From IMG/VR virus record IMGVR_UViG_3300027759_000046, positions 189,138 to 253,137 of that record: a stretch of DNA of 64,000 nt. One strand, 5' to 3'. The position numbers and the translations under genes were made by a program. The notes beneath the pieces are model-generated. The model was not told where the DNA came from and did no database searches. It saw nothing but the letters and a program-made list of their open reading frames with translations. This document shows positions 1,734 through 58,770 of this stretch, one piece after another (within the stretch, counting starts at the first letter, position 1; every line of letters starts with the position of its first letter).

Positions 1734-2540
1734 ATGAAACACACAATCATTAAAGACTTCAAAGGTTGGAACGTGCTAATGGAAAATGCAGGATTCATCG
1801 GTGAAGAAACGGTTGGAACCGCAGGTTCAGCTGGAACAGCCGGCACAGCAGGTACAACCGGAACAGCTGGTTCAGCTGGCACAGCAGGCGCTACCTCCGC
1901 TCCATTAACTGCAATCACGGCAGCAGACGGCGCGCTAACTGCTGAGGATATTAAAAAGGTACAGGCAATTGTCTACAATGCCCCACTAACTGACACTAAA
2001 TCATGTGACGGTAAAGTTGGCCCAAACACAAAGGCAAAAATTAAAGAGTTTAGAACTGCAAACGGCATCACTGACGAAACAGTTGAACCCAATCAGACTA
2101 CGGTAGGTCCAAAAACCTTGGCTAAGATGATTGAAAAAATTACTGCAGGATTTACGCCAGGCGGAACCGCTGGAACAGCTGGAACAGCCGGTGCAACTGG
2201 TGTATTCGATCAACGTAATGCAACTGACGACCAGGCTGCAACCAAGATTTGCGACATGATTGTTGCTAAATTCAAGGACACTGCTTTCTGGCAACCATTT
2301 AAAGGAACGTTTAACGATGATGAAGGTCAAGCAGGTTTTGCATATAACAATTGGTACACGACCGAGGTTATGCCTCTAATTAAGACGCTTAGACAAGGCG
2401 ATCCAAACATTGCTCGATTAGAAGCAGCCGATGCGGCAGTTCGTCAAAAATTAGCCGGCGGAATGGCAAACGATTCAGCTTCTTGGCAAATCACAACGCT
2501 TAACGGCGAGATGAAATATCAAGTAGACACAGATTTCTAA
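1734..2540 (+). CDS. putative virion protein with GTAG repeats and peptidoglycan-binding domain
   Basis: MKHTIIKDF...ME leader; GTAGSAGTAG tracts; DGKVGPNTKAKIKEFRTANGI resembles PG_binding_1. Confidence 0.65.
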   Translation: MKHTIIKDFKGWNVLMENAGFIGEETVGTAGSAGTAGTAGTTGTAGSAGTAGATSAPLTAITAADGALTAEDIKKVQAIVYNAPLTDTKSCDGKVGPNTKAKIKEFRTANGITDETVEPNQTTVGPKTLAKMIEKITAGFTPGGTAGTAGTAGATGVFDQRNATDDQAATKICDMIVAKFKDTAFWQPFKGTFNDDEGQAGFAYNNWYTTEVMPLIKTLRQGDPNIARLEAADAAVRQKLAGGMANDSASWQITTLNGEMKYQVDTDF

Positions 2541-2555
2541 AATAAACCAAGCTTA

Positions 2556-4334
2556 ATGAAGCATACAATTATAAAAGATTACAGGAGCTGGTTGTTTGAA
2601 TCAACTCAGTACATGACAGAAGCGGCTGATCCAAACACGCCTATTGAGACTCTATTACAAAATACTGATCTTGAAGGTCTTTATCAAAGAATCATGTCAA
2701 CCGATGCGGCCTCTAAGGGTTTACCTAATTACGCTAACGTAATGCAATGGTGGCATCAAGGCGGACCGGATTTGGGATTATGGAAGTCTCTATTTAAAGC
2801 GGGCGGCGAAGCCAAACGCGATAAGGTAAATTCAGCTCGTAGCATGTACTATTGGTTGGGAGGTTTTGCAACTAAGGGTCGTAGTGCTCAAAGTGCAGGC
2901 AAAGCAAACTATATCAAAAACGTTGAAGACTTCTGTACAGCAGTTAAGACCAATGCTCCAGCAATAGTTGCCGCAGTTAACGCATTCCCAAAACCTGCTG
3001 AAAAAACACGTTACGCAGGTTGGAACGAAGCAGCTGCTAAAGCAGATGCAGTTTTGGCTTTCTTACAGACAGCTAAGGCAAAGAGTCTTAACTTAAGCTC
3101 ACAGGCAGCAGCGATGCTAATTCCATACAGTGCAATTGACGGTCAACTATCAGTTAACAATGCACCAACACCGCCAGCAACCTATTTCAAACTTACCGCA
3201 GACACATTCACAAAAGACAAGACTGATGATAATTTATCGGTAACGTCTTATGCTTATCAAACAGGTCAATGGACTCTACAAACAAGCGCGGTAACAACTC
3301 TTCAACAATTACAGACAAACATTGCAACGCTAACATCAGCAATGGCCGATCAAACTAAACTTTCTACATATTTTTCAGCAGATAATACATTAAGCGCTGA
3401 GAATAAGAAAGTTATCCTAGATTTTGTTAACACCAAGGTACAGGCTTATCTTGAAAGAAAGAATAAGGCTCTTAAACCTGGAGAAACGGCAATGACTGTT
3501 GACTCTGCAATTAAAACTGCAACTGACCTTTACATTTCGCCAAATGGTACTAATTTGACTCTATCGCCTGCAACCAAGCAGCCATCACCAGAGCCAATCA
3601 CAGTTTCAGGCTCATATCCTGAAAATCCAAATGGCGATTGGAATTCAGCTGGTGCAAAGAAAGCTACTCAGTTCTTTGGTGACGATAAGATCCAGATTGA
3701 AGCAGGTCCTATTGCGGAAATGACAAACGGTATCAAATCGTATCTAGCTCAAATTAAAGCGATGGGCGCTCAAATTACTGGCGTAAAAATCTGGGGTATT
3801 TCATCTACTAGTGCTGTACCAAGTTCATACGATCCTGCAACAAAGGGTCCAAATCCTGACGCAGGCTACACGACTGCAAAGAACGGCCCGCTTGCTCAAG
3901 ACCGTTTGACCTCAATTAAAACTTCTCTACGTCAAATCTTTACTCAAAACGGCGTTACTGATAATTTGATAACGGAAGATGCGACTCAAGATAAAGTTAC
4001 TCCAAACATTGGAGCTGCTTGGACTGAACAAGATAAGGCTAAGTTTGCAAATCGCAAACAGCCAGGTAAAGAGGCTCTACTTAAAGAGTACGACGATAAA
4101 TTTGGCAAATACAAATATGCATTTGCTCGTTTTGAGATTACGTACACAATGACTCAGCAATTTACGGTTACACCACAGGCAGATCCTATTCCAAACTCAG
4201 ACTGGAAAGTTTACATTAACTGGATTGATGAAACTTGGACACCACCGACAATTAGCATTCCAGGAATAGGTTTTAAACCTAAATCTGGAGGTTCTCAAAG
4301 AGATTGGGGAAAAACTGACTGTCCAGTATTCTAA
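2556..4334 (+). CDS. putative virion protein with OmpA-like C-terminal region
   Basis: MKHTIIKDYRSWLFE leader; NGPLAQDRLTSIKTSL resembles the OmpA-like N..L...R motif. Confidence 0.5.
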   Translation: MKHTIIKDYRSWLFESTQYMTEAADPNTPIETLLQNTDLEGLYQRIMSTDAASKGLPNYANVMQWWHQGGPDLGLWKSLFKAGGEAKRDKVNSARSMYYWLGGFATKGRSAQSAGKANYIKNVEDFCTAVKTNAPAIVAAVNAFPKPAEKTRYAGWNEAAAKADAVLAFLQTAKAKSLNLSSQAAAMLIPYSAIDGQLSVNNAPTPPATYFKLTADTFTKDKTDDNLSVTSYAYQTGQWTLQTSAVTTLQQLQTNIATLTSAMADQTKLSTYFSADNTLSAENKKVILDFVNTKVQAYLERKNKALKPGETAMTVDSAIKTATDLYISPNGTNLTLSPATKQPSPEPITVSGSYPENPNGDWNSAGAKKATQFFGDDKIQIEAGPIAEMTNGIKSYLAQIKAMGAQITGVKIWGISSTSAVPSSYDPATKGPNPDAGYTTAKNGPLAQDRLTSIKTSLRQIFTQNGVTDNLITEDATQDKVTPNIGAAWTEQDKAKFANRKQPGKEALLKEYDDKFGKYKYAFARFEITYTMTQQFTVTPQADPIPNSDWKVYINWIDETWTPPTISIPGIGFKPKSGGSQRDWGKTDCPVF

Positions 4335-4888
4335 TTAATTTTCTTAGAAACTACACCAGTTCCGAAATAGATCCAGGTAGAAGTGCTTGGATCTTTTTTT
4401 ATGCCTACCGCAAAGGCGATATGAGTAACATCAGGATTCATTAAGACCCATTTATGAGCCGGTGAATACATCCAACTATCGAATAGGGTCTGTATTGCTG
4501 AATCCTCAGATGGAATTGGAAAGACCTTAAAGTTTGGAACCGCTGGATAGCTTGCACCGTATGAAGCACAAACCTCAAGGCTAAGATTCCATGAGAATTG
4601 GTCAGATGAAACTGCTTGGAATTTTTCAACTCTGTGCCTTGCTCCAGGATAAGATTGAGATTCTCCAGGCTGAGCTTCGTATTCAGTGTGATCGCTGATT
4701 CCACGTCTAACCATGTATCGATTATGGAATTCGACGGCTGAATCTAGAACTGCTGAATACTGCAAGGGCTTAAGACCCAAAGCGGTTCTTTGCTTATTGG
4801 TTAAGCTGATTAAGATCGAGTCCTGGTGGGTTTGAGCAGAAGTGTTAACTGCTAACCCGATTGCGATTATTAAGAGTAACTGCTTCAT
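4331..4888 (-). CDS. CAP/SCP domain protein with signal peptide
   Basis: signal peptide MKQLLLIIAIGLAVNTSA; NKQRTALGLKPL, H..YM and WMYSPAHKWVLMNP CAP motifs. Confidence 0.85.
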   Translation of the reverse strand: MKQLLLIIAIGLAVNTSAQTHQDSILISLTNKQRTALGLKPLQYSAVLDSAVEFHNRYMVRRGISDHTEYEAQPGESQSYPGARHRVEKFQAVSSDQFSWNLSLEVCASYGASYPAVPNFKVFPIPSEDSAIQTLFDSWMYSPAHKWVLMNPDVTHIAFAVGIKKDPSTSTWIYFGTGVVSKKIN

Positions 4889-4921: not shown

Positions 4922-5581
4922 ATGAAACCTTTTAAACTATTGCTAGTACTACTGATTTCGTTTGTACTATTTACATCATTTTCAACTGAGTTTACAGTTA
5001 AAGACAAGATTGTGATCTTGGCTCATGCTGGCTATGTTTCACATTATAGCACAGGTTTAAAATACCCAGTTGAGGTGGAGTGGTGGGATACTAAAGCTCG
5101 ACTGGGCTGCACGACTAAATTTCCTAGAAAAGACCAATTTGCACCAGATCCATTACTACCAGCTGAGACGAGCCTTGCTGATGATTATTCTGGATCAGGT
5201 TTTGATCGAGGTCACATGTGCCCAGCGGCAGATAACCAATGCGATTCTGAATTCTTAACAGAGTGCTTCTATTTTTCAAATATGGCACCTCAATATCATT
5301 CGCTGAACGCTGGGGTCTGGAAAACTCTTGAAACTCGCACCAGAGAATTTGCTGAGCAATTGGACTCAGTTAAGGTTTGGTGCGGCAATATTGGATCGGT
5401 CTCCAAAATCGGAGAGGTTTCAGTACCAGCAAAGTGTTGGAAAGTAATTTACATAAAGAAGACCAAAGTTTGGGAAGCTTACGTTTTTGAAAATACAAAA
5501 GAACAGTCTAAAAAGCTTGATCAATTAAAGGTCAAGGTATCAGACGTTGAAAAATTAACCGGCTTTAAATTTAAACCATGA
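4922..5581 (+). CDS. DNA/RNA non-specific endonuclease (NucA/EndA family) with signal peptide
   Basis: DRGHMCPAAD and FYFSNMAPQ..LNAGVWKTLE motifs; hydrophobic N-terminus. Confidence 0.92.
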   Translation: MKPFKLLLVLLISFVLFTSFSTEFTVKDKIVILAHAGYVSHYSTGLKYPVEVEWWDTKARLGCTTKFPRKDQFAPDPLLPAETSLADDYSGSGFDRGHMCPAADNQCDSEFLTECFYFSNMAPQYHSLNAGVWKTLETRTREFAEQLDSVKVWCGNIGSVSKIGEVSVPAKCWKVIYIKKTKVWEAYVFENTKEQSKKLDQLKVKVSDVEKLTGFKFKP

Positions 5582-6053: not shown

Positions 6054-6656
6054 TTACATTTCGTTCTCTTTATTAGCGCCTTTCTTCTGGAAACCAAATG
6101 GTTTAGCAGCAGGCTTTGCAGCCGGTTTACCGAATGGCATTCCTTTTGCAGCAGGTTTTTCGTCTTTCTTAGCGAATGGGTTTCCCTTTGCCGCAGGTTT
6201 ACCGAATGGCATTCCTTTCGCAACAGGTTTAGCTTTAGCTCCTCGTTTTGGGGCCTCTTCCATTTCTTCCTCTTCAGCAGCTTTGCCTTTTTTCTTTGCA
6301 GCAGGCTTTAGATTAGCGAATTTTTTATCAACTTCTTTAAGAGCTTCAATTTGAGCTTTTTTCTTTGCCTCATATAACTCTTCATCAGTCATGCGATTCA
6401 TGTTATGTCTTGAAATTCTGTGTGCATCGTAATCATCTGAATGCATTGCTTGGTCTAACTCACGTTGTGAACTAGTAGACTCTTCGCCACATGCTGTGCA
6501 ATATCCTTCTTCATCAATTTCAGAACCACAACATTGTGAAGTTTCTTCCATTGTATCGCTATCGCCGAATCTATCTTCTTGAGAAAAGGAATCTCCGTGA
6601 TTGGATTCATAATTTTCATTAATGAATTGGGTAAATCTTTTTACTTGATTTTTCAT
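6054..6656 (-). CDS. putative internal head protein with Cys cluster and Lys/Ala/Pro-rich (H1-like) repeat tail
   Basis: start at 6656 gives MKNQVKRFTQFINE; CCGSEIDEEGYCTAC; repeated AKGMPFGKPAAK. Confidence 0.65.
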   Translation of the reverse strand: MKNQVKRFTQFINENYESNHGDSFSQEDRFGDSDTMEETSQCCGSEIDEEGYCTACGEESTSSQRELDQAMHSDDYDAHRISRHNMNRMTDEELYEAKKKAQIEALKEVDKKFANLKPAAKKKGKAAEEEEMEEAPKRGAKAKPVAKGMPFGKPAAKGNPFAKKDEKPAAKGMPFGKPAAKPAAKPFGFQKKGANKENEM

Positions 6657-6675
6657 AGTATTTAAACTGTTTATT

Positions 6676-7116
6676 TTATGGTTCGATATCTTCTTCCTCT
6701 TCAGTATCATCTGAAAGGCCTAACATTTCGTCATTGAATTTATTGAAAGCTGATTCAGCTTCTTTCATGGTCTTATTTAAAGTAATAAGCTCATCTTTTA
6801 GAGTCTGAACTTTCTCTTTGTCTTCGTCAGTTGCTGGATTTTTACGAGCATCTTCTGGCATTTCCAAGAACTCTTTTTGTTTATCTTTAAATGCTTTAAC
6901 TGCATCTTTACGAGCTTGGTCAAGTTTCTTGAATTTACCAATCTCAGTTGAATCATCAATATCTTCAACCGAAGTAGGCTCAGCATCAGTCGGTGCAGCT
7001 GGTTCAGCAGGAGCGTCCATTTCAGCTGGTGTTAAGTCAGCAGGAGGATCAATTGCAGGTCCAGTAGCATCAACCTTTTCAGATTCTTCAAGCCATTGAT
7101 TGTACCTATAAATCAT
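6676..7116 (-). CDS. acidic coiled-coil hypothetical protein
   Basis: MIYRYNQWLEE leader-like N-terminus; GATAAATAAA upstream (7137-7146, -). Confidence 0.6.
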   Translation of the reverse strand: MIYRYNQWLEESEKVDATGPAIDPPADLTPAEMDAPAEPAAPTDAEPTSVEDIDDSTEIGKFKKLDQARKDAVKAFKDKQKEFLEMPEDARKNPATDEDKEKVQTLKDELITLNKTMKEAESAFNKFNDEMLGLSDDTEEEEDIEP

Positions 7117-7136
7117 TGTTTAGTTAGCTATTTTAG

Positions 7137-7166
7137 TTTATTTATCTACGACTCTCGAATAAATAA
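7137..7166. promoter_or_regulatory. divergent pair of (G/A)ATAAATAA late-promoter-like motifs
   Basis: GATAAATAAA on - and GAATAAATAA on +; same arrangement at 10827-10884 and 32883-32940; resembles the T4 late promoter TATAAATA. Confidence 0.7.
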
Positions 7167-7173
7167 CTCTACA

Positions 7174-7950
7174 ATGAAATTACTAACATTCAATACATGG
7201 TTATCTGAGACGGCCAGGCCACTAGTAAAGCTTAGTGATCTTGATATTAACCGTCGATATAAAGATGAGAGGTATGAGTATGAACTATTTCCAAGATTTA
7301 GACGACTTAAAGCCAGAATCAACGAACTAGATAAAATGCCAACTCTTGAGCACTGGTTCGCAATGATGCAGAACTCAGACGCCGAATTCTATACGCTAGT
7401 TCAAACAGGCGAACTTGGTCAACCTGATGTCAGAGAACTATTTAGAGACCTAACGGGTCGTCGTGCAGCAAAGATGGCAAAGTATAATCTAGAAGAGAAC
7501 AAAGGAGAAATCGCTGCATGGCAATGTAGCATAGACCCTTCTTGGAAAATGATTGCGCTATGGCCGACTGATCCGGGCTATGAGGACGCTGCGAAGATTT
7601 TTGACTATTTAGGAATTGCGTTTGGCGACCTTTCTTCTAAAACTATTTACGTAGACGGTGTTCAGCTTGAACAGGAAAATTTAACAAAGGATCACCTACT
7701 TGCAATTGAAGCTCATGAAATTAGTCATGGCATATTAAGTCATCAATCGTCAAATCGAGAATTAGCGGAATACGATGAGAGACAGGAAAGAGAAGCCGAT
7801 TGGATGGGAGTCAGAATCCTTGATGCAATGGATTATCAAATGGCGGCTCAAATCCTAGAAGATCGATATGAAACTCACTATGGCGAAAGTTCAGAAGATC
7901 TTGATAACACCGAAAAATTAGAATCTCAATTGCGAGATTATTTAAAATAA
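7174..7950 (+). CDS. HEXXH zinc metallopeptidase (ImmA/IrrE-like), leader-tagged
   Basis: start at 7174 gives MKLLTFNTWLSE; AHEISH...QEREAD zincin motif. Confidence 0.75.
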   Translation: MKLLTFNTWLSETARPLVKLSDLDINRRYKDERYEYELFPRFRRLKARINELDKMPTLEHWFAMMQNSDAEFYTLVQTGELGQPDVRELFRDLTGRRAAKMAKYNLEENKGEIAAWQCSIDPSWKMIALWPTDPGYEDAAKIFDYLGIAFGDLSSKTIYVDGVQLEQENLTKDHLLAIEAHEISHGILSHQSSNRELAEYDERQEREADWMGVRILDAMDYQMAAQILEDRYETHYGESSEDLDNTEKLESQLRDYLK

Positions 7951-7961
7951 AACAAAATACG

Positions 7962-8255
7962 ATGGCTAAAAAGTATTTCTTTGGATGGGACAACCTTAAA
8001 TGGTTAATTACTCAGCTTGGCGCGATGTACAGCGGAAAATCTTCTTACTTTTCAAAAAAGAGAGTTGAATCAGGTATTGCATTTGCAATTGCTCAATGGG
8101 GTATGATCTTCTTCTTACTTAAAAAATATGAAACTCTAAGTATGACTGACTTCCTAATTTGGGCAGGTGTTGAATTTACAGTTTCAGGATACATGATCAA
8201 TCAGATCCAAAAAGAAAAAGCAGCGAATTCAGCACAAGCAGACGATGTTGCATAA
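7962..8255 (+). CDS. small two-TM membrane protein (holin-like)
   Basis: SKKR followed by two hydrophobic segments. Confidence 0.45.
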   Translation: MAKKYFFGWDNLKWLITQLGAMYSGKSSYFSKKRVESGIAFAIAQWGMIFFLLKKYETLSMTDFLIWAGVEFTVSGYMINQIQKEKAANSAQADDVA

Positions 8256-8264
8256 TTAAAATTT

Positions 8265-8864
8265 ATGAAAACTTTTTCTCAATTCATTAATGAGAATTCA
8301 CAGGATTCACAGCACTATGAATTAATGGCCTCTCTTGCAAATGCAATGAACACTGCCGGTCGATATGCAAACGCGTCAGTAAATCAAGCAGACAATTCAA
8401 TTCGACTCTCATCAAACTGGGAGCTTGACACTATGAAAATTAGCGATCTTGGAAGAGTTGAACCGACTGCCTATTATGTTGCAAATCTTGTTCCAAAATT
8501 TAATAAGGAGGCCTCTACTAATCTGAGCAGACTAATTCAATTAGGGCTAGGAAATGTAAGCGATTTGCTTGAAGGATTTACTATAACTACCGCCCTTAGT
8601 GTAGACGTTTACGAAGTTGAAGGTTATGAATTCAAAGACGGCCCAGACACTAATGAGTATACTCTAGAAGAGTTAGACATTCAGGGGTTCTTTGATACTG
8701 GTGATATTAGTGGAGCGGGCGAAGCTCTTGTTGAATGGTGGGATGAAACTGCTAATGAATATGGCTATATGCTTTATACACGAGTAGCAGAAGACCTTGA
8801 ATCGTATATTGCAAGCCGCCAACCTGATGAAGAAGACGATGAGTTGGAAGATGAAGGGTGGTGA
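8265..8864 (+). CDS. acidic putative internal head protein
   Basis: MKTFSQFINE, very close to the T4 capsid-targeting sequence MKTYQEFIAE; RLIQLGL motif. Confidence 0.6.
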   Translation: MKTFSQFINENSQDSQHYELMASLANAMNTAGRYANASVNQADNSIRLSSNWELDTMKISDLGRVEPTAYYVANLVPKFNKEASTNLSRLIQLGLGNVSDLLEGFTITTALSVDVYEVEGYEFKDGPDTNEYTLEELDIQGFFDTGDISGAGEALVEWWDETANEYGYMLYTRVAEDLESYIASRQPDEEDDELEDEGW

Positions 8865-8887
8865 TGTTGGAATCTGAAGAGATTTAA

Positions 8888-9076
8888 TTAAGGCTTGCCC
8901 GTCATCATTTCATAATAGTCCCAAAGATCTTGACAAGTTTCGTACTCTTCAAGATCTTCAAGCCATTTTATAACATCGAGAATTTCAGACCAATACGGAG
9001 AGGCAATTCCTCTTTTTTCTAAGTCCTTACACTTCTTGCGCATTTCTGCGTGTCCACTGCCTTGATCTGCTGACAC
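8888..9076 (-). CDS. small protein with UVR-like motif
   Basis: EEYETCQDL resembles the UvrB/UvrC EdyE.a..l.d motif; start uncertain. Confidence 0.4.
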   Translation of the reverse strand: MSADQGSGHAEMRKKCKDLEKRGIASPYWSEILDVIKWLEDLEEYETCQDLWDYYEMMTGKP

Positions 9077-10037
9077 TATAATCCCCGTATTTTTGGCGAG
9101 GTTGTACCTCTATAGTATATTTAACGTCGAGGTCGAGCAATTGTTTGAGGCACTGAACAAAATCTGAAGTATGTAGGCTTAGTACCGAATTATAATCATC
9201 ATCTCGATATCCGCCAAAGAGGGCGCATGAAACAGGCAGAGGTCTTTCAAGTTTTCCGTCCATTTTCTTTACCCAACTCCAGAAAAATTCTGAACATTTT
9301 GTCCACCAATATGTTGAGCACTGATGCCCTAATTGATCGTCAGCATGTGAATCGGCGCCGTGACACCAAACGACATAGTCAATTTTACCGGACAAGATCG
9401 CTGATTCTAATTTACCTTCAACAAAGGTTACAAGATCCTCATAATATTTTTGATCTGAGAAACTTGGGTTAAAGTTGAATCCAACTGGCACCGCTGAATT
9501 TAGATCAGGCTGAAACACCCGAGTGTCTTCAATTGAATTACCGAAGTGGCCGTCTAAGTCTAGATAACAGCCGACCTTTCCAAGCTCTCTCCAAATCTTA
9601 ACTGATGCAATTGCCTGTCCACTAAATGTACAGAATCCACTGCCTCCGTCTGGTCGAGCATGGTGGAATCCGCTAGTTGGGCTAAAGCTAACTTCACCAG
9701 GATTTTGGATGGAATTTCGGATTGCTGAATAGATTGACGCATTAGTATAACGAACGGACTCTGCGAATTGCTGATTCCAACTCAAGCCGTTTGATGACGA
9801 TTTTGGTCCGCCCTTAAAAAAGTCTTTGACGTAATTTTTAGTGTGTGCAACCAAAAAGTCAGAATTACCGAATCTGTCGAATGCTTTAGTTATTTCAAAA
9901 TGATCAAGTAGACCCTTCTTGGCCAGATACTCGATCAAGAGCTTAGGTTTTAGAGGGGACTTACTGTAGTTAGAGTATGAGTCCTTCTCTAGTACCTGCT
10001 TTGGATTGTAAAATGTTTTTATCTTTAGGTGTCTCAT
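9027..10037 (-). CDS. histone deacetylase-family (Zn-dependent, AcuC/HDAC) protein
   Basis: GFHHA..GSGFC, DLDGHFGN, GADSHADDQLG and GGY catalytic motifs; ATG at 10037 preferred. Confidence 0.92.
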   Translation of the reverse strand: MRHLKIKTFYNPKQVLEKDSYSNYSKSPLKPKLLIEYLAKKGLLDHFEITKAFDRFGNSDFLVAHTKNYVKDFFKGGPKSSSNGLSWNQQFAESVRYTNASIYSAIRNSIQNPGEVSFSPTSGFHHARPDGGSGFCTFSGQAIASVKIWRELGKVGCYLDLDGHFGNSIEDTRVFQPDLNSAVPVGFNFNPSFSDQKYYEDLVTFVEGKLESAILSGKIDYVVWCHGADSHADDQLGHQCSTYWWTKCSEFFWSWVKKMDGKLERPLPVSCALFGGYRDDDYNSVLSLHTSDFVQCLKQLLDLDVKYTIEVQPRQKYGDYSVSRSRQWTRRNAQEV

Positions 10038-10053
10038 ACTCTTAATAATATAC

Positions 10054-10081
10054 AAAAAAAGTCGACCAAATGGCCGACTTT
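10054..10081 (-). terminator. intrinsic terminator
   Basis: minus strand AGTCGGCC-ATTT-GGTCGACT followed by a T-run. Confidence 0.8.
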
Positions 10082-10101
10082 ATAGTAAGAGTGCGCAAGC
10101 T

Positions 10102-10821
10102 TTATTTCTTTAGAAAAATATTATCTAGGTCGTCTAACCAATCCCAAACATGGGAGATTTCGACTGGACCGTCTTCGACTGGCACCTTTGCGCTGTTTTC
10201 TGAAACAGTTTGCGTTATTTGAAGAGTGATTGCGACTTGTGATAAAATAGTTGAAATAATTTCAGAGAATGTCCAGTTAGTTACTCCTTCAAAATAGACT
10301 TCCTCAGTATGTGGGTCAACGTATTCTAACCAGTCATCTGCGACCAGCGGCAAATTACACCAGTCCTGAAAATTTATTGACGCGAGCGGATGCAAAATAT
10401 CTGTGTCCGGATCGTCCTCATTGATTATTTGCAAGCCCATTAGCACGTTATGGACAGTTATAAAGTTAATGAGGTCTTCGTCTTCTTTTATTTTGCTTAC
10501 TTGAGCAGCCTTTAGTAGGAATACTTGGTTTGCATCTATTTTTTTAGCTGAAATTGAAGATTGATCGGCTGACATGAAAATTTCGTCAAGGCTAACTCCG
10601 CTCAGGCTCTGCACAAAATACAGCTTAATTATGTCTGAATACGGTTTTAGGAGGTTTAGTACAGAGTGAACTGACAAACCTTCTTCAATTTCAACTGCGT
10701 AACTCATGAACCATGTTATAGGTAGAGAAGCGTCCGCAATATTCTTTTTAATCCAGTCTTCAGAAGATTCATCCCAGAATGAAAAGAAGAGCCCGTCCTT
10801 ATTGATTGATACTTTGTGCAT
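10102..10821 (-). CDS. hypothetical protein
   Basis: 239-aa ORF with upstream promoter motifs. Confidence 0.6.
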   Translation of the reverse strand: MHKVSINKDGLFFSFWDESSEDWIKKNIADASLPITWFMSYAVEIEEGLSVHSVLNLLKPYSDIIKLYFVQSLSGVSLDEIFMSADQSSISAKKIDANQVFLLKAAQVSKIKEDEDLINFITVHNVLMGLQIINEDDPDTDILHPLASINFQDWCNLPLVADDWLEYVDPHTEEVYFEGVTNWTFSEIISTILSQVAITLQITQTVSENSAKVPVEDGPVEISHVWDWLDDLDNIFLKK

Positions 10822-10902
10822 ATTAGTTATTTATCGTTTAGTTATTTTACTCCATTTACTGGTACGGATTTCGCGAATAAATAACTAAAAGAATCAAACT
10901 TA

Positions 10903-12888
10903 ATGATTAATTCATTTATTCAAATGGTTAACGAATCAGCCGATTTAGAACTAGGCCAAGAAGGTCTTGTTGATGAGATGGGAGTTAAACGCCCAGAAAG
11001 TTTAACAGGCAGTGAAATGGGAACAATTCGTCAATCTTCAATTCAACACAGGCAAAATCAGACAAACGTTCCACGTAAAAAGAACTATCACGAATTGGTC
11101 GTGGAGCTAGTTGACGATTTAAAGCGTATGCCTAGAACAGAGATCACAATGGAGAAACCAGCAAATTCTCGATACTATTATCCAAAGTTACCGGCTGCTA
11201 TTGTGCAAAAAATGCGCGAAGCCTATGCACTAAACTCTAGATCATTTGTCCAAGATATTGGAAATTGGAGAGACATTAGTCCAAACGATTCAGACGCAAT
11301 CTATTTTAAGATTGAAGCACCTAGTGATCATCAACGAAGCCATTTTCCAAACGGCGGAATTCCGCCAATGCTTAGAGGAACTGGACTAGGTTACAAATTA
11401 TATAGAGCCCTACTTAAAACAGCCGGATATCTTTCTTCAAACCGTTCTGGATCAAATGAAAAAGATAAAGCTTGGGGTTCTCTACTTGCTCAAAAAACAA
11501 ATCCTGACGGAACTTTGTCAGTAGATGACGCTCACGCAATTATTGGTAAGTCCAATTGGATGGCACTAGACAAGGGAATGTCTGACCGTGGGAAAATAGA
11601 TGCAGCTGTCAGTTTCATAACTAACACAGTCGGAGTTCAACGAACTCAGCCCGATAAATTTGATATGGATGATGAGCTATTGTCAATTCTACCGGACGAT
11701 TTTCTGGTTAAATTGGACCCAGCTTATTTGCAATCACTAGTTGATGATGGTCGTATTACTCAGGAAAAATACAGACAAATTGAAGATTCAAGAAGTGAAG
11801 CTGACCGTCGTGAAAGAGAACGTCAAGCTCAAGCTGAAATTGAAGCACGCGAACGTCGTGCTAGAGAAGAGGCTGAGACTCGTCGTCGTTTAGCTAGTCG
11901 AATCCAACAGTTTGGTGCAGACCCAGACGCTGAATGGAGTGTTGGCGATTATATCGTAGTTAAGTCTTACCTATTTGACGCTTCATATAACGGTTTACCT
12001 ATTCGTCGAGTGGTTTCACAAAACGGCGGTACTTATATAGCTGTTAAAATCTCAGATGCAATTAGAATTGATAATGGCGATATTACTCCAAATCAAGCAA
12101 ACGATAATCGATCAACATCTGACAAATCACAATGGGTTAAAGTAAACCTTGATCAAATCCCAGATCTAACGCGAGTTAATTTAACTGACGCTGAGCGTAC
12201 GTACCTTGAGGGTCAAATGGATCCCGAAACTGCGGCTAGAGCAAGAGCAGAACGTGAGGAAGCTGAACGCGAAAGACGCGAAGCTGAACGTAGAGAAAAC
12301 GAGGAACGTGCTAGAAATAGAGAAACATTCGGTTCTTTACCCGATAATGCTGGTGAATTAAAGACTTCTCAAACTGCGAGAAATAATGGCTCAATCAGAG
12401 AAGCTGATCTATTAAAGAAATTTAGAGATTCATATTTCACAGATAGAATGGAGATCATTGTAATGGGACCGCAACAGAGAGAAGCTCTAAGAAATTCATT
12501 TGGTGTTCCAGTATTCATTGCATGGACCGGTTCATCAAGACGTCCAATACCAGCGTCTCTTGATACAATAAATAATGATCCACAATCTGTTAAATTAACG
12601 AATGCTGTAACCGGCTTTACAATTGATGCACCGTTTACTGGTCTTGGCCTAATGGCATATCCATTAACTGAAGTAACAGTTGACGATAAAATGAGAGCTA
12701 GAGCAGGAACTCACTATTATATCTCTGGCCATAAGAATGCCTTTGGTATTCTCGCAAAGAGTGATTATGGTGCAGTTAATACATCTGCTCAGAAATTTAT
12801 CTACGTTAAAGCATACGGATACGGAGAACGTAGCGTATCAGTTAGATTAGATTTATTAAGAAAGATTGGAACTCCTACTGAGCTGTAA
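10903..12888 (+). CDS. leader-tagged multidomain protein with GNAT acetyltransferase-like motif
   Basis: MINSFIQMVNE; IPPMLRGTGLGYKLYRALL matches the GNAT acetyl-CoA motif R/QxxGxG; Glu/Arg-rich coiled-coil linkers. Confidence 0.6.
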   Translation: MINSFIQMVNESADLELGQEGLVDEMGVKRPESLTGSEMGTIRQSSIQHRQNQTNVPRKKNYHELVVELVDDLKRMPRTEITMEKPANSRYYYPKLPAAIVQKMREAYALNSRSFVQDIGNWRDISPNDSDAIYFKIEAPSDHQRSHFPNGGIPPMLRGTGLGYKLYRALLKTAGYLSSNRSGSNEKDKAWGSLLAQKTNPDGTLSVDDAHAIIGKSNWMALDKGMSDRGKIDAAVSFITNTVGVQRTQPDKFDMDDELLSILPDDFLVKLDPAYLQSLVDDGRITQEKYRQIEDSRSEADRRERERQAQAEIEARERRAREEAETRRRLASRIQQFGADPDAEWSVGDYIVVKSYLFDASYNGLPIRRVVSQNGGTYIAVKISDAIRIDNGDITPNQANDNRSTSDKSQWVKVNLDQIPDLTRVNLTDAERTYLEGQMDPETAARARAEREEAERERREAERRENEERARNRETFGSLPDNAGELKTSQTARNNGSIREADLLKKFRDSYFTDRMEIIVMGPQQREALRNSFGVPVFIAWTGSSRRPIPASLDTINNDPQSVKLTNAVTGFTIDAPFTGLGLMAYPLTEVTVDDKMRARAGTHYYISGHKNAFGILAKSDYGAVNTSAQKFIYVKAYGYGERSVSVRLDLLRKIGTPTEL

Positions 12889-13681: not shown

Positions 13682-14056
13682 ATGCTTAAGAAATTTGATG
13701 AATTTAATGAAACCTTGAATGAGGGTTTTTGGGACTGGTTGACAGGCAAGTCTGAAAAGGGAGAAAAGAAGGACAAAGTGACCAGTGCTAAAGAGGGTCC
13801 AATTGATGCAAAGGTAGCAGAATATTATAAAACGCTACAGGATTTTGCTGATGCTGGCAAATCTATTGAAGTTCAGTCACTTGGCAATATGTCTTATTCT
13901 AAAATGGTTGAAGATATTCAACTTGCGTTGGAATTCCTAGGTTATAAACTTGAAAAATACGGAGTTGATGGATACTTTGGCCCAGAGACTTCTGCTGCCA
14001 TTGTTAAATTCAATCAAGATACCTTAAATAAAATACCAGATTCTCAACATGATTAA
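13682..14056 (+). CDS. peptidoglycan-binding domain protein, leader-tagged
   Basis: MLKKFDEFNETLNE; IQLALEFLGY...GVDGYFGPETSAAIVKFN. Confidence 0.8.
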   Translation: MLKKFDEFNETLNEGFWDWLTGKSEKGEKKDKVTSAKEGPIDAKVAEYYKTLQDFADAGKSIEVQSLGNMSYSKMVEDIQLALEFLGYKLEKYGVDGYFGPETSAAIVKFNQDTLNKIPDSQHD

Positions 14057-15299
14057 AGGATTCGATCAATTTACTGGAAAGATTAATGAAGCTTCAAACG
14101 GTCAGCTAAATGATGCTGACCTAGTTCCAATTCAGCCACTCGGTAAGAGCGGCGGAAACCATAAATTAAATTCACAAGCAGCAAAAGCATACGAAGAAAT
14201 GAAGAAGGCTGCTGAGGCAGACGGTGTAACTTGGGGTATTACTGACTCGTATCGAGATTATGAAGCCCAAGTTGATGTTGCTGCACGTAAAGGTCTTTAC
14301 AAAAATGGAGGATTGGCGGCAGTTCCTGGAACATCAAATCACGGATGGGGTAGTGCTCTAGATCTTGACCTAAATTCTGAAGCTCAAGAATGGTTAAAGA
14401 AGAACGCTGAAAAATTTGGATTCACAAATATTCCAAGAGAACCTTGGCATTGGGAACATAAAGCCAGTGTTGAGCTAGCAAAGACTGGAAAAGAAGGCAC
14501 TGGATCTTCAGCTAAAGTCGGATCAGTGCTAATTGATTCAGATCTAATTAAGAGACTGATTGCAAAATTAAAAGAGAAGAATTTCAGCCAAAAGGATCTA
14601 GACCAGTACATTGCTAAGTCTTCGTCAGGTAAAGGCGCAAACTTTAAAAGCGGTGAAAAGTTTCCTGCTGAAAATATGAAAGCCATTGAAAAAGCAATGG
14701 ATGATCATGGTATAACAAATGAATATGCTAGAAAGGCAATTCTTGGAGTTATTTCAAAAGAATCTCCAGGTTTAAAATCTGAAATAAGTTATTCTGGAAC
14801 AAGTGCTGCTCGAATTAGAGAAGTTTTCCCAAGTAAATTTGGTGATAAATCTGATTCTGAGATTGACGACATTAAGAAAGACGATGCTATGTTTTGGGAT
14901 GTAGTGTATGGCGGTAAATACGGAAACACTGAACCTGGAGACGGTTCAAAGTACCGAGGCCGTGGTTTTAATGGAATAACATTCAAATCAAATTACGAAA
15001 ACTTACAGAGAATTTACGACAGGTCTGGCGCTAAGGTTGGCAATATTGATATTGTTAAGAATCCTGAACTTCTTGAAAAACCTGAAGTTGCAGCCGAATT
15101 CGCTGTTCTATATTTCATGGATACTTTTAAACGTCACGGTAAGGATGTGAATTCCTACACTGATTTAGAGTCAGCCGTTACTGATTACGTTCAAGCAAAT
15201 GCAGGCTGGGGAACTTCTTTAGCTGGTGCAGTCACATCAAAGGGTTTACAAAAGGCAATGGACTTTGCGAAATCATTAGATACAGACCAAATTGCTTAA
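14049..15299 (+). CDS. M15B (VanY-like) peptidase fused to GH19-like glycoside hydrolase
   Basis: SYR..EAQ, PGTSNHGWGSALD and EPWHWE; GNTEPGDGSKYRGRGFNGITFKSNY; MIKGFDQF..INE leader. Confidence 0.88.
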   Translation: MIKGFDQFTGKINEASNGQLNDADLVPIQPLGKSGGNHKLNSQAAKAYEEMKKAAEADGVTWGITDSYRDYEAQVDVAARKGLYKNGGLAAVPGTSNHGWGSALDLDLNSEAQEWLKKNAEKFGFTNIPREPWHWEHKASVELAKTGKEGTGSSAKVGSVLIDSDLIKRLIAKLKEKNFSQKDLDQYIAKSSSGKGANFKSGEKFPAENMKAIEKAMDDHGITNEYARKAILGVISKESPGLKSEISYSGTSAARIREVFPSKFGDKSDSEIDDIKKDDAMFWDVVYGGKYGNTEPGDGSKYRGRGFNGITFKSNYENLQRIYDRSGAKVGNIDIVKNPELLEKPEVAAEFAVLYFMDTFKRHGKDVNSYTDLESAVTDYVQANAGWGTSLAGAVTSKGLQKAMDFAKSLDTDQIA

Positions 15300-30064: not shown

Positions 30065-31603
30065 TTATCTTCTAACCTTTAGGAAGTCAGAGAATGAAGT
30101 AATCACAGTAGCTTCAGAAACTGCGGTAAATCCTCCTTGTTGACCGCCTTGTTGACCGCCTTGAACAGGAGTCTTTTGCATGTCTTGGGAAATCTTATCA
30201 ACTTGTTGAGCAAGAGGTCCTCCACCTGTAATACCGGCCCAATAGCCGTTACATAGAGAAAGCATGTCTCCGCTTATTTCAGAAGCAACGCAGTACTCGT
30301 AAAAGTCTCCGTCTTCTCCAAAATTCTTAGACCATACTTGTTTAACAACTGCTGCTGTTTGTGGGCTAAGTGAAGTGATCATGAAGGTGATTTGTAATTC
30401 GTCAGCTCCGTCAGTATAACCTTTTGCTAATTCTCTAATTTGAGTACAGAATGCAAATGCTGCATCTTCAGCTGTGAAGTTTTGAGCTTGAACTGGTTCT
30501 GCACCGCTTGCTGCGGCTGAGAGAGCTCCGCCTGTTGCCATTCCGGCACCAACTCCTGCTCCGATTTTTCCACCGACTTGAGCAGCTTTGCCTGCTTGAG
30601 TTAAGGTTGAGAAACCTGATTGAGCTGCTCTAAAGTCATTTGCACCAGCTGCCAGTCTTGAAACGTTTGCCGCTCCTTGAACTCCAACACCAGTTGCTTC
30701 AGCTCCAGTTGTTGCCATTGCACCGCTTCTAAATGCTGTGAAACCTCCTCTTAATTTATTAACGGCTCCAGCTGCTCTAACCGCTCTAGCTCCAGTAATA
30801 AGGCCTTTTGCCGCGGCTCCTACACCGAATGTACAAAGCCCAATCGCAACGTCTACTACCAATGATTCTAGAAAATCTACTCCCATTCCGGTCGCAATAT
30901 CTTGTTCAGTAACGGTATCACCGTAAACTGCTCTAGCTAAAACTTCAGGAGTTCCAGAGAAATCTCCTTTAACCGCATCCATTAGGGACTCATTATATGC
31001 TGTCTGATATGCAGTACCTAATGCTTTGAATATTTCTGGCACGTTTGCACCTTTTTCGTAACCAATACGATAGATTGCTCCAGCTAATGCACCAAGCTTG
31101 TCTTCGTCTGTTCCAAAATTTAATCCGAAAATTGAACTTCCTTCAACACCCTTTCTAAATTGAGTTGCTAAGTAATTCATATCTAAACCTTCGATTACCT
31201 TAGACGTTGAATCCCAATCAATATAAACTCCAGATTTTCCAGACGCGGTTTTACCGCCAGCTACATAGATTGAAACTGCGTATTCTTGGTCTCCGATTTT
31301 TACGGTAACTCGACCTGGACCAGATTGGCCAGACGCTACTAAGTTTGCAGACTCAGCGTTAAGCTTTAAGAATTCTGCGTCCGCTTTATCGCCTTTGCTA
31401 GCATTATCAATAATTAATTTCTTGATTGCCTGAACTTCCGGAGAATCAGTTGGTTCAATTGAAATGGTATTACCTTCAGGTTTTGCACCAGGCGAACCGG
31501 CTGTGCCAGCGGTACCAGCTGAACCGGCTTCAGTTAGCGAATAGTAGCCCAAAGACTTGCTCTCGTTTAATATTGCGTAATTTCCTATGTTTATGTGTCT
31601 CAT
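30065..31603 (-). CDS. putative virion protein with annexin-like repeats and Gly/Ala-rich membrane segments
   Basis: FGTDEDKL..AVKGDFSG and GYTDGADE..VASEISG; hydrophobic VAIGLCTFGVGAAA; LNE leader and GSAGTAG repeat. Confidence 0.55.
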   Translation of the reverse strand: MRHINIGNYAILNESKSLGYYSLTEAGSAGTAGTAGSPGAKPEGNTISIEPTDSPEVQAIKKLIIDNASKGDKADAEFLKLNAESANLVASGQSGPGRVTVKIGDQEYAVSIYVAGGKTASGKSGVYIDWDSTSKVIEGLDMNYLATQFRKGVEGSSIFGLNFGTDEDKLGALAGAIYRIGYEKGANVPEIFKALGTAYQTAYNESLMDAVKGDFSGTPEVLARAVYGDTVTEQDIATGMGVDFLESLVVDVAIGLCTFGVGAAAKGLITGARAVRAAGAVNKLRGGFTAFRSGAMATTGAEATGVGVQGAANVSRLAAGANDFRAAQSGFSTLTQAGKAAQVGGKIGAGVGAGMATGGALSAAASGAEPVQAQNFTAEDAAFAFCTQIRELAKGYTDGADELQITFMITSLSPQTAAVVKQVWSKNFGEDGDFYEYCVASEISGDMLSLCNGYWAGITGGGPLAQQVDKISQDMQKTPVQGGQQGGQQGGFTAVSEATVITSFSDFLKVRR

Positions 31604-58401: not shown

Positions 58402-58770
58402 GGGGGTGCTTGGATTTGACGCGGATGGTTCAAGTATGCTCGCACGCCGAGGATGATGCTAAGACTCGCTAAAACGTATCAAAACGATAAGTGGAAACAC
58501 TAACTTCTGGAGCCTAGTTAACGCTGGCGTTAGCACTCCGGTTACTGAAGAGCTTTTAGCTGCATAAGTAACCAAGCGGCAACTGCTTGACCGAACCAAA
58601 GTTGCAAAACCAGCATGGCGTAGCGGCCAAGTCTAACCGTTACCGACTTTTAGCTCTAAGTCGTTAAAGAATGAGATAGTTGGTCCAGTTAGAAAATGGG
58701 ACTAAGCGTGTGAACGAGAGTTTACTCGAAAATCTTGCGGACACGGGTTCGACTCCCGTCACCTCCACCA
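58402..58770 (+). ncRNA. ssrA: tmRNA
   Basis: 5' GGGGGTG pairs with 3' CACCTCC-ACCA with a G3:U wobble; GGATTTGAC 5' motif; T-arm CGGGTTCGACTCCCG; tag ORF 58493-58567 GNTNFWSLVNAGVSTPVTEELLAA*. Confidence 0.96.

What the first reader, a model, noticed from the sequence alone, without database searches (positions are those of the whole stretch)
6054..12888. Candidate phage lysine-acetylation switch: packaged GNAT plus HDAC-family deacetylase, near an H1-like protein
Seen: an intact Zn-dependent deacetylase (9027-10037; HH, DxDxH, D and GGY residues present) lies two genes from a leader-tagged, late-motif gene with a GNAT acetyl-CoA motif (LRGTGLGYKLY, 10903-12888) and ~2.4 kb from a Lys-rich repeat protein. 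The deacetylase has no leader and follows a GTATATTA (non-late) motif. Inference: an injected acetyl writer and a separately timed eraser act on host or phage proteins. Alternatively the HDAC reverses host acetylating defences or acts on acetyl-polyamines.
Basis: partly seen in the sequence, partly recalled or inferred. Interest (0 to 1): 0.7.

Follow-up and report, generated by a model that had tools for sequence, protein, structure and literature searches.

The report
Phage deacylase beside packaged GNAT-like protein
A 253-kb freshwater jumbo phage encodes an intact HDAC11-like zinc deacylase next to a late, leader-tagged 661-aa protein with a very divergent GNAT-like domain, but I found no evidence that the two act as a writer/eraser pair.

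Summary
The sequence facts hold. Gene 9027-10037(-) is a catalytically complete Zn deacylase (Pfam PF00850, E 2.7e-18). It has no leader. It sits behind a terminator and a TGTATATTA box of a second, non-late promoter class.

Gene 10903-12888(+) has the late box ATAAATAA and a T4-like capsid-targeting leader, and the genome encodes a gp21-like prohead protease. Its N-terminal domain is GNAT-like by predicted fold only: every structural search returns GNATs, but weakly (Z about 5). No sequence model recognises it.

The Lys-rich protein is a leader-tagged cargo protein with a KPAAK tail.

- The deacylase's nearest solved relatives are class IV enzymes, which are long-chain deacylases or have no known peptide substrate. 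They are not acetyl-lysine erasers.
- Adjacency of the two genes holds in 26 of 31 loci, all from one phage clade.
- Four near-complete phages carry the deacylase without the GNAT-like family.
- Twenty contig fragments carrying the GNAT-like family show no deacylase.

Best reading: an ejected acyltransferase-like effector and an independently acting early/middle deacylase, linked by shared synteny. A timed write/erase cycle is not excluded (about 0.2).

The parts
6054..6656 (-). Leader-tagged 200-aa cargo protein. It has an acidic N half with a CC...CxxC motif and a Lys/Ala/Pro-rich C-terminal tail with KPAAK / MPFGK repeats.
   Evidence: The tail has pI 10 and 25% K. There is no Pfam match. 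Low-identity homologues exist in 6 of the 30 other related loci.
7174..7950 (+). Leader-tagged 258-aa protein with an HExxH motif, preceded by a late box.
   Evidence: The Peptidase_M78 hit is only weak (E 0.085). It is conserved in nearly all related loci.
8265..8864 (+). Leader-tagged acidic 199-aa protein (starts MKTFSQFINEN).
9027..10037 (-). Zn-dependent deacylase of the HDAC superfamily, class IV-like, 336 aa, without a leader.
   Evidence: Pfam PF00850 E 2.7e-18. Catalytic residues are aligned and invariant. The best solved relatives are 9RJD (liHDAC11) and 9GKV (VcHdaH). There are 1073 homologues and none of those inspected has an N-terminal leader.
10046..10053 (-). GTATATTA box, a member of the GTATA[AT]TA promoter-like class, 8 nt before the deacylase ATG.
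10058..10081 (-). Intrinsic-terminator-like hairpin (10-bp stem) plus T-run. It ends the 10102-10821 transcript just upstream of the deacylase promoter box.
10102..10821 (-). Acidic 239-aa protein of unknown function with a late box 5 nt before its ATG. It always lies next to the 661-aa gene and is transcribed divergently from it.
   Evidence: It matches no family in Pfam, PHROGs, NCBIfam, PADLOC or the Atlas.
10877..10884 (+). Late box ATAAATAA of the 661-aa gene.
10903..12888 (+). 661-aa late, leader-tagged multidomain protein. The leader ends at VNE11 and a second conserved site lies at DE25|M26.
   Evidence: The AF2 model has pLDDT 84.
11074..11751 (+). Residues 58-283: divergent GNAT-like domain with RSH at 145-147 and RGTGLG at 158-163, just before helix 162-174.
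   Evidence: Domain model pLDDT 92. All top-50 VIA hits are GNAT superfamily, Z 3.9-5.2. Further support comes from Foldseek PDB, AFDB and BFVD, the Atlas and language-model features.
11899..12225 (+). Residues 333-441: SH3-like barrel resembling Tudor/PWWP domains, flanked by charged coiled coils.
   Evidence: Z 4.3-4.6, weak.
12433..12876 (+). Residues 511-658: two further barrels resembling tandem Tudor / SAWADEE / KOW domains.
   Evidence: Z 4.2-4.7, weak.

Best explanation
Two modules sit side by side because of shared ancestry, not because they are a proven pair.

(1) The 661-aa protein.
- It is made late.
- Inferred by analogy with T4: its N-terminal leader takes it into the prohead, a gp21-like prohead protease trims it after VNE11 (and perhaps DE25), and it is ejected with the DNA into the next host.
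- Inferred from fold and conservation: its divergent GNAT-like domain then transfers an acyl group to a host target.
- Weak lead: three Tudor/KOW-like barrels choose that target. This would make it a functional analogue of T4 Alt.

(2) The deacylase.
- It is a catalytically intact class IV-like Zn amidohydrolase.
- It is made inside the infected cell from its own sigma-70-like promoter class, and it is not packaged.
- Going by its nearest characterised relatives, it removes medium or long acyl chains from lysines, or acts on a non-peptide amide, rather than erasing acetyl-lysine.
- Because it occurs in many phages without the GNAT-like family, its primary job is independent of the 661-aa protein.

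(3) The Lys-rich protein is one more leader-tagged internal cargo protein. Its AlgP/H1-like tail probably binds the packaged DNA.
For: Deacylase:
- Pfam match and complete catalytic residues.
- Profile ranking: 9RJD liHDAC11 at 9e-13, VcHdaH at 1.6e-11, then HDAC8. No APAH or HDAH appears in the top 60.
- Gatekeeper Phe124 is conserved.
- None of the 12 homologues inspected has a leader; their extra length is C-terminal.
- Its own terminator and promoter box.
- Present in near-complete phages of 482, 391, 120 and 95 kb that lack the GNAT-like family.
- No shared neighbour in distant phages.

661-aa protein:
- Late box and leader.
- Peptidase_S77 prohead protease in the genome.
- The capsid-targeting concept is from PMC3012670 and PMC10229621.
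- GNAT-like fold from five structural libraries and a language-model search.
- The R-x-H, L-G, Y and W positions stay conserved across a family of 441 clusters.
- Leader-like [LIVFM]-x-E N-termini are four-fold enriched in that family.
- There is no canonical GNAT elsewhere in the genome.

Other leader-tagged genes nearby are ejection-type enzymes, a VanY peptidase and a peptidoglycan-binding protein.
Against: - No sequence model links the N-domain to GNATs.
- Structural scores are low: Z at most 5.2 and TM 0.3-0.7.
- Cofactor binding is untested.
- Packaging is inferred by analogy with T4, without virion proteomics.
- The deacylase signature is mixed. Phe at the gatekeeper is clade-B-like. 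Gly at the L2 position is clade-A-like. The L1 sequence SKSPLKP matches neither clade (PMC13325672). Substrate class is therefore open.
- Conserved adjacency in 26 of 31 loci is also what a functional pair would show. In the genomes checked where the GNAT-like family occurs and coverage is good, the deacylase is present too.
Confidence: 0.45

Rival explanations
1. The ejected GNAT-like protein writes an acyl mark on host or phage proteins at injection. The separately timed deacylase later erases that same mark, giving a pulse.
For: - The deacylase gene lies about 1 kb from the 661-aa gene in 26 of 31 loci, and in three more it is about 20 kb away on the same contig.
- The two genes use distinct promoter classes, and one has a leader while the other does not.
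- They are the only GNAT-like and the only HDAC gene in the genome.
- LR756504 (636 kb) carries both.
- Fragments of both genes are present in a lake RNA library. This is weak evidence.
Against: - All 31 loci belong to one clade, so the adjacency is not independent evidence.
- Four near-complete phages have the deacylase without the family.
- 0 of 20 fragments carrying the family hold a deacylase.
- In LR756504 the four paralogues lie roughly 50-290 kb from the deacylase.
- The nearest relatives of the deacylase are poor deacetylases (PMC11532494, PMC13325672).
Confidence: 0.2
2. The deacylase is an acetylpolyamine amidohydrolase. It frees spermidine or putrescine for replication and packaging of a 253-kb genome.
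For: - Giant viruses encode functional APAH enzymes and phages encode spermidine acetyltransferases (PMC9992855).
- The aligned L2 residue is Gly, as in class IV clade A enzymes, which are proposed to act on non-peptide substrates (PMC13325672).
Against: - No APAH or HDAH chain is among the 60 best PDB matches of the family profile.
- That survey found viral APAH homologues only in Imitervirales (PMC9992855).
- The gatekeeper Phe points to a foot pocket for longer acyl chains.
Confidence: 0.12
3. The N-terminal domain of the 661-aa protein is not an enzyme. It is a structural internal-head or ejection protein that merely keeps a GNAT-like topology.
For: - No Pfam GNAT hit in 92 family members.
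- Low Z and TM scores.
- Within the R-x-x-G-x-G motif only the last Gly is kept across the family.
Against: Near-invariant R-x-H, Y and W positions persist across 441 clusters that otherwise share 20-25% identity. This argues for a conserved active or binding site.
Confidence: 0.2

Closest known systems
Class IV Zn-dependent deacylases (HDAC11 family; Leptospira liHDAC11 9RJD; Vibrio cholerae VcHdaH 9GKV, cluster 5b)
   Same: - Best solved matches over nearly the full length.
- Small single-domain enzyme of about 320 aa.
- Complete His-His / Asp-His-Asp / Tyr machinery.
- Phe at the foot-pocket gatekeeper in S-G-F-H-H, as in the G-G-F-H-H of HDAC11.
   Different: - The aligned L2 position is Gly, not the clade-B Glu.
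- L1 reads SKSPLKP, not HPFD or HRFD.
- The phage family has its own invariant blocks.
- It is encoded by phages, and activity is untested.
T4 internal proteins and Alt (capsid-targeting sequence cargo cleaved by gp21)
   Same: - A leader of about 10 aa ending in [LIV]-x-E.
- Late expression.
- A gp21-like Peptidase_S77 in the genome.
- Diverse enzymes carry the same leader (PMC3012670, PMC10229621).
   Different: - The cargo here is GNAT-like, not an ADP-ribosyltransferase.
- Packaging and cleavage have not been shown experimentally.
- There are far more tagged genes (at least 21).
GNAT superfamily N-acyltransferases (for example RimL, NatD, AAC(6')-Ib, and the GNAT domain of Kre33/NAT10)
   Same: - Predicted order of beta4 - loop - alpha3 - beta5 - alpha4 - beta6 - beta7.
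- R-G-T-G-L-G sits at the loop before alpha3.
- All top structural hits are GNATs.
   Different: - No sequence-model match.
- A 10-residue insert lies before the motif.
- About 100 of 226 residues superpose, at 3-4 A rmsd.
- The family has its own R-x-H signature.
AlgP / histone H1-like Lys-Ala-Pro repeat proteins
   Same: A KPAAK-type repeat tail with high pI. The comparison with AlgP and H1 comes from my own knowledge.
   Different: - No H1 globular domain.
- An acidic N half with a Cys motif.
- The tail is short (95 aa) and interrupted by Glu runs.
- The protein is leader-tagged phage cargo.

Membership tests
HDAC / arginase-deacetylase superfamily (Pfam PF00850) | Profile match above the curated cut-off | tested here: met
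   66.8 bits against a 27.9-bit cut-off, E 2.7e-18. Confirmed by the genome search.
HDAC / arginase-deacetylase superfamily (Pfam PF00850) | Catalytic His-His, Zn ligands Asp-His-Asp, and the catalytic Tyr in G-G-Y | tested here: met
   H125-H126, D162, H164, D229 and Y277 are aligned to HDAC8 and VcHdaH. They are invariant in 21 homologues.
HDAC / arginase-deacetylase superfamily (Pfam PF00850) | Hydrolysis of an acyl-amide substrate | not testable with these tools
   This needs an enzyme assay.
Class IV (HDAC11) clade B long-chain deacylases | Bulky hydrophobic foot-pocket gatekeeper (Phe or Tyr before His-His) | tested here: met
   S-G-F124-H-H. F124 is at least 90% conserved. The criterion is from PMC13325672.
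Class IV (HDAC11) clade B long-chain deacylases | Glu in loop L2 (hsHDAC11 E94, liHDAC11 E84) | tested here: not met
   In the profile alignment to 9RJD's sequence, that Glu aligns with Gly84 of the S-N-G-L block. This is a loop alignment, so it is uncertain.
Class IV (HDAC11) clade B long-chain deacylases | L1 HPFD motif (HRFD in clade A) | tested here: not met
   Read by eye, with no residue-level alignment covering this region: the region I take to correspond reads S-K-S-P-L-K-P and is invariant in the phage family.
Acetylpolyamine amidohydrolase (APAH) | Closest similarity to characterised APAH enzymes | tested here: not met
   No APAH or HDAH chain is among the 60 best PDB matches of the profile.
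GNAT superfamily | Match to a GNAT sequence model | tested here: not met
   - No Acetyltransf family at E<=1 in 30 members.
- None at E<=0.01 in 62 distant members.
- The profile against PDB sequences found nothing.
- hhalign against a thin GNAT alignment gave nothing.
GNAT superfamily | GNAT fold | tested here: inconclusive
   - All 50 best VIA matches are GNAT superfamily, but Z is only 3.9-5.2.
- Foldseek PDB best E 9e-3.
- BFVD NAT_SF phage protein: E 4.6e-5, TM 0.62.
- Atlas viral GNAT cluster: TM 0.69.
GNAT superfamily | Q/R-x-x-G-x-G/A pyrophosphate loop between beta4 and alpha3 | tested here: inconclusive
   R158-G-T-G-L-G163 sits just before helix 162-174. Across the family only L162-G163 are kept.
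GNAT superfamily | Acyl-CoA binding and transfer | not testable with these tools
   The complex job with CoA was not folded. It counts neither for nor against binding.
T4-type capsid-targeting cargo | Short N-terminal leader ending in [LIV]-x-E, together with a gp21-like protease in the genome | tested here: met
   Leader census of 21 genes against 1 and 0 at control positions. Peptidase_S77 at E 1.1e-9, above its cut-off.
T4-type capsid-targeting cargo | Presence of the processed protein in virions | not testable with these tools
   This needs virion proteomics.
Histone H1 / linker histone | Winged-helix globular domain | tested here: not met
   The Lys-rich protein has no Pfam match. Only the tail composition resembles H1.

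The most novel reading that the evidence does not exclude
A jumbo-phage clade delivers a packaged acyltransferase with reader-like barrels into the host at injection. It then expresses an HDAC11-like deacylase from an earlier promoter class to remove the same, possibly long-chain, acyl mark. This would be a virus-run, timed write/erase cycle of protein acylation in bacteria.
Probability: 0.17. Interest if true: 0.85.

Novelty: new variant of a known kind. Interest (0 to 1): 0.5.

Why it matters
Phage HDAC-family enzymes are numerous: 1073 homologues here, in several unrelated phage size classes. I found no paper that tested a phage HDAC-family enzyme, though my literature searches were few.

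The GNAT-like domain defines a family of 441 clusters at 50% identity. It matched no Pfam family in the 92 members scanned. Many members carry capsid-targeting-type leaders, which points to a widespread class of ejected effectors.

If either enzyme acts on host proteins, this would be a tractable case of phage control of bacterial protein acylation. If the two are coupled, it would be the first viral writer/eraser pair in bacteria that I know of.

The promoter and leader grammar worked out here (ATAAATAA, GTATA[AT]TA, [LIV]-x-E leaders) also allows the virion cargo and the timing classes of this uncultured phage group to be predicted from sequence.

Tried and rejected
- Megablast of the region against phage records found nothing.
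- PHROGs, NCBIfam and PADLOC gave nothing useful for the deacylase, the 661-aa protein or the 239-aa protein.
- phmmer and profile searches of the 661-aa protein against PDB sequences found only coiled-coil noise.
- Pfam scans of 30 and then 62 family members found no GNAT family.
- hhalign of the family against canonical phage GNATs (three sequences, two of them identical) gave probability below 1%. The GNAT profile was too thin to be informative.
- Complex prediction of the domain with CoA was not folded and is not evidence either way.
- A weak Acetyltransf_1 hit elsewhere in the genome turned out to be a TnsA-like endonuclease.
- My first count of the exact 8-mer GTATATTA suggested no motif. 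I revised this once the degenerate class was analysed.
- IMG/VR records G001 (288,572 bp) and G018 (347,857 bp) share sequences with LR756504, and their lengths sum to about its length. I therefore dropped G018 as an example of the family occurring without the deacylase.
- The search for related loci with the two distant-family alignments failed for lack of a conserved stretch. A degenerate DNA pattern was used instead.
- Laying RNA-library contigs showed fragments of both genes. It cannot prove transcription or timing.

Full report
**Context.** The window is the last 64 kb of a 253,137-bp IMG/VR phage record, estimated 94% complete. DNA runs that hold the sequence are freshwater, riverine and estuarine metagenomes. 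The region 1.7-15.3 kb is dense in genes whose products begin with a shared leader (MKxFxQF[ILV]NE and variants).

**The deacylase.**
- ORF 9027-10037(-) encodes 336 aa. It matches Pfam Hist_deacetyl at E 2.7e-18, above the curated cut-off.
- Alignment to HDAC8 and to VcHdaH places H125-H126, D160/D162/H164, D229 and Y277 (in F-G-G-Y) on the catalytic and zinc-binding positions. All are invariant in an alignment of 21 homologues sharing 52-78% identity with it. The enzyme is therefore very probably active.
- A database search finds 1073 homologues, almost all metagenomic. The 12 homologues I inspected begin MR(S/H)xKIK, with no leader. Their length variation is C-terminal.
- tblastn finds copies in the huge phages LR756504, LR756501/3 and LR756511, and in Rhodococcus phage E3 gp202.

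**What kind of deacylase.** A profile of the family ranks solved structures as follows:
- 9GZ5/9RJD at 9e-13;
- 9GKV at 1.6e-11;
- then HDAC8 and other class I enzymes;
- no acetylpolyamine amidohydrolase or HDAH in the top 60.

9RJD is Leptospira HDAC11, a clade B class IV enzyme with long-chain deacylase activity. Clade A enzymes showed no peptide activity (PMC13325672). 9GKV is VcHdaH, cluster 5b, a weak de-decanoylase (PMC11532494).

Judged by the signatures in those papers, the phage enzyme is mixed:
- the gatekeeper is Phe (clade-B-like);
- the residue aligned to the L2 Glu is Gly (clade-A-like, though loop alignments are uncertain);
- L1 reads SKSPLKP rather than HPFD or HRFD (my reading by eye of the corresponding region).

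It is best described as a separate phage lineage nearest to class IV. This weakens the reading of it as an acetyl-lysine eraser. The substrate remains open: a longer acyl-lysine or a non-peptide amide.

**Expression signals.**
- ATAAATAA occurs 82 times against 38 expected from base composition. In 70% of cases an ORF of 60 aa or more starts within 40 nt, against an 11% baseline. It precedes many leader-tagged genes and large ORFs that look structural, so I call it the late box. That label rests on analogy with T4 TATAAATA, from my own knowledge.
- K-mer enrichment upstream of genes reveals a second class, (T)AGTATAATA with the variant GTATATTA. GTATA[AT]TA has 45 copies, and 30 are followed by an ORF start within 40 nt. 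Control 8-mers give 5-22%.
- This second box often follows a hairpin and T-run. The deacylase has exactly that layout: hairpin 10081-10058(-), T-run, TGTATATTA, 8 nt, ATG.
Timing itself is inferred, not shown.

**The leader.**
- A strict pattern ([FWY]xx[FWYLM][LIV][NESTA]E) occurs in residues 3-22 of 21 of 269 genes, against 1 and 0 at control positions.
- The leaders end in [LIV]-x-E. The genome encodes a Peptidase_S77 (T4 gp21-like) prohead protease above the Pfam cut-off.
- In T4, a 10-aa capsid-targeting sequence takes internal proteins into the scaffolding core and is cut off by gp21 (PMC3012670, PMC10229621).
- Other tagged genes in the window are typical ejection enzymes, a VanY peptidase and a peptidoglycan-binding protein.
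- Packaging of the 661-aa and Lys-rich proteins is thus a well-founded inference, but it is untested.

**The 661-aa protein.**
- It has 126 close homologues of about 655 aa, all uncultured.
- The AF2 model (pLDDT 84) shows a leader, a globular domain (about residues 60-280), a charged coiled coil, a barrel (333-441), a second coiled coil, and a C-terminal beta-rich domain.
- Folded alone, the N-domain reaches pLDDT 92.
- Every structural search returns GNAT-superfamily proteins.
  - All 50 best VIA matches are GNATs (Kre33/NAT10, RimL, AAC(6'), Mom, TmcA, TacT). About 100 residues superpose at 3-4 A, with Z only 3.9-5.2.
  - Foldseek against PDB and AFDB gives E 2e-3 to 1e-1.
  - BFVD gives a 144-aa phage "NAT_SF domain" protein at E 4.6e-5, TM 0.62 and 22% identity.
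  - The Atlas gives a viral GNAT cluster at TM 0.69.
  - Language-model features point to viral GNAT clusters.
- R158-G-T-G-L-G163 lies at the loop entering helix 162-174, followed by a strand, a helix and two strands. That is where the GNAT pyrophosphate loop sits.
- Against this, no sequence model sees a GNAT. Across the wider family only L-G of the motif is kept, together with R145-x-H147, Y167 and W191.
- I rate a GNAT-like fold at about 0.8 and real acyltransferase activity at about 0.5.
- The other domains resemble Tudor/PWWP and tandem Tudor/SAWADEE/KOW barrels at Z 4.2-4.7. These are leads only.

**The family.** A profile search of 1.84 billion representatives finds 441 clusters at E<=1e-3, with varied architectures and the domain near the N-terminus. 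N-termini carrying [LIVFM]-x-E are four-fold enriched over control positions. The variant x-E-[RKMA]-[GP]-[LIV] occurs in 28 of 144 against 0 at controls. This looks like a family of leader-tagged phage cargo proteins that matched no Pfam family in the members scanned.

**Co-occurrence.**
- In 26 of 31 viral contigs carrying the 661-aa family, the deacylase lies about 1 kb upstream, with the 239-aa gene between.
- In three more it is about 20 kb away on the same contig. Two fragments show none.
- All of these contigs are one syntenic clade, so this is not independent evidence of coupling.
- Outside the clade:
  - Deacylase loci with 57% identity or less have no N-domain gene within 10 kb.
  - Near-complete phages of 482, 391, 120 and 95 kb have the deacylase but not the family.
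  - Neighbours of the deacylase differ between lineages.
  - LR756504 has the deacylase and four N-domain paralogues roughly 50-290 kb from it.
  - Twenty further contig fragments with true family members (2-46% complete, about 1.2 Mb in all) contain no deacylase.
- The link is therefore clade-specific adjacency. Genome-level co-occurrence in the reverse direction could not be judged from fragments.

**The Lys-rich protein.** It is 200 aa counted from the ATG at 6656 and carries the leader. It has an acidic N half with a CC...CxxC motif and a 95-aa tail of 25% K, 20% A and 12% P with KP[AV]AK units. It lacks any H1 globular domain and is poorly conserved. Nothing ties it to acylation. A DNA-associated internal protein is the simplest reading.

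**Other evidence.** A lake metatranscriptome holds 99%-identical fragments of both genes and none of the 239-aa gene. DNA carry-over cannot be excluded, and no timing follows from this.

**Verdict.** Most likely this is an ejected GNAT-like effector and an independently acting class IV-like deacylase that are neighbours by descent (0.45). The writer/eraser switch remains possible (about 0.2). It is a new variant of known kinds, of moderate interest.

Noticed in passing
window 58402-58770 (+): ARAGORN calls a tmRNA gene with tag peptide GNTNFWSLVNAGVSTPVTEELLAA inside the phage window.
   Followed up: no
whole genome; for example window 27095, 30006 and 24861 (-): A second promoter-like class, GTATA[AT]TA, typically sits right after a hairpin and T-run and 5-30 nt before the ATG. 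It is distinct from the late box ATAAATAA.
   Followed up: yes
window 10102-10821 (-): An acidic 239-aa protein with a late box and no leader is the invariable divergent neighbour of the 661-aa gene in all 31 loci (24-62% identity, apart from one identical copy). It could be a chaperone or inhibitor of the effector. It matches no known family.
   Followed up: partly
window 10975-10980 (residues E25-M26 of the 661-aa protein): A second invariant [LIV]-x-E|M-G site lies 14 residues after the first leader. Many distant family members start directly with a leader of this type (I-N-E|R-G). This suggests two processing sites.
   Followed up: partly
window 4331-4888 (-) and 4922-5581 (+): A divergent pair of secreted proteins: a CAP-domain protein and a NucA-type non-specific endonuclease (Pfam E 1e-39). 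Both have signal peptides. Several phage signal peptides end in A-Q, S-Q or G-Q, which would fit a Bacteroidota host. The Q-rule is from my own knowledge.
   Followed up: no
window 13682-15299 (+): The leader-tagged peptidoglycan-binding protein and the leader-tagged VanY-type peptidase suggest that cell-wall enzymes are also delivered as head cargo.
   Followed up: partly
window 1734-2540 (+) and 30065-31603 (-): Two leader-type proteins carry G-T-A-G-T-A-G collagen-like runs just after the leader.
   Followed up: no
window 7174-7950 (+): A leader-tagged protein with an H-E-x-x-H motif (weak Peptidase_M78 hit, E 0.085). It may be a packaged metalloprotease.
   Followed up: no
loci L099/L100 (G001), L132 (G018), and L091/L092/L130 (LR756504): IMG/VR records of 288,572 and 347,857 bp, both scored 100% complete with inverted terminal repeats. 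They carry sequences identical to LR756504, and their lengths sum to about its 636,363 bp. They may be two pieces of one genome.
   Followed up: partly
proteins P0216, P0218, P0222; P0164, P0169, P0170, P0180: Some phage deacylase homologues carry a C-terminal Fib_succ_major domain (PF09603). Others carry charged Arg/Glu-rich tails like the linkers of the 661-aa protein.
   Followed up: no
window 6054-6656 (-), residues 41-56: The Lys-rich cargo protein has a C-C-x11-C-x-x-C motif in its acidic half, possibly a small zinc-binding site.
   Followed up: no
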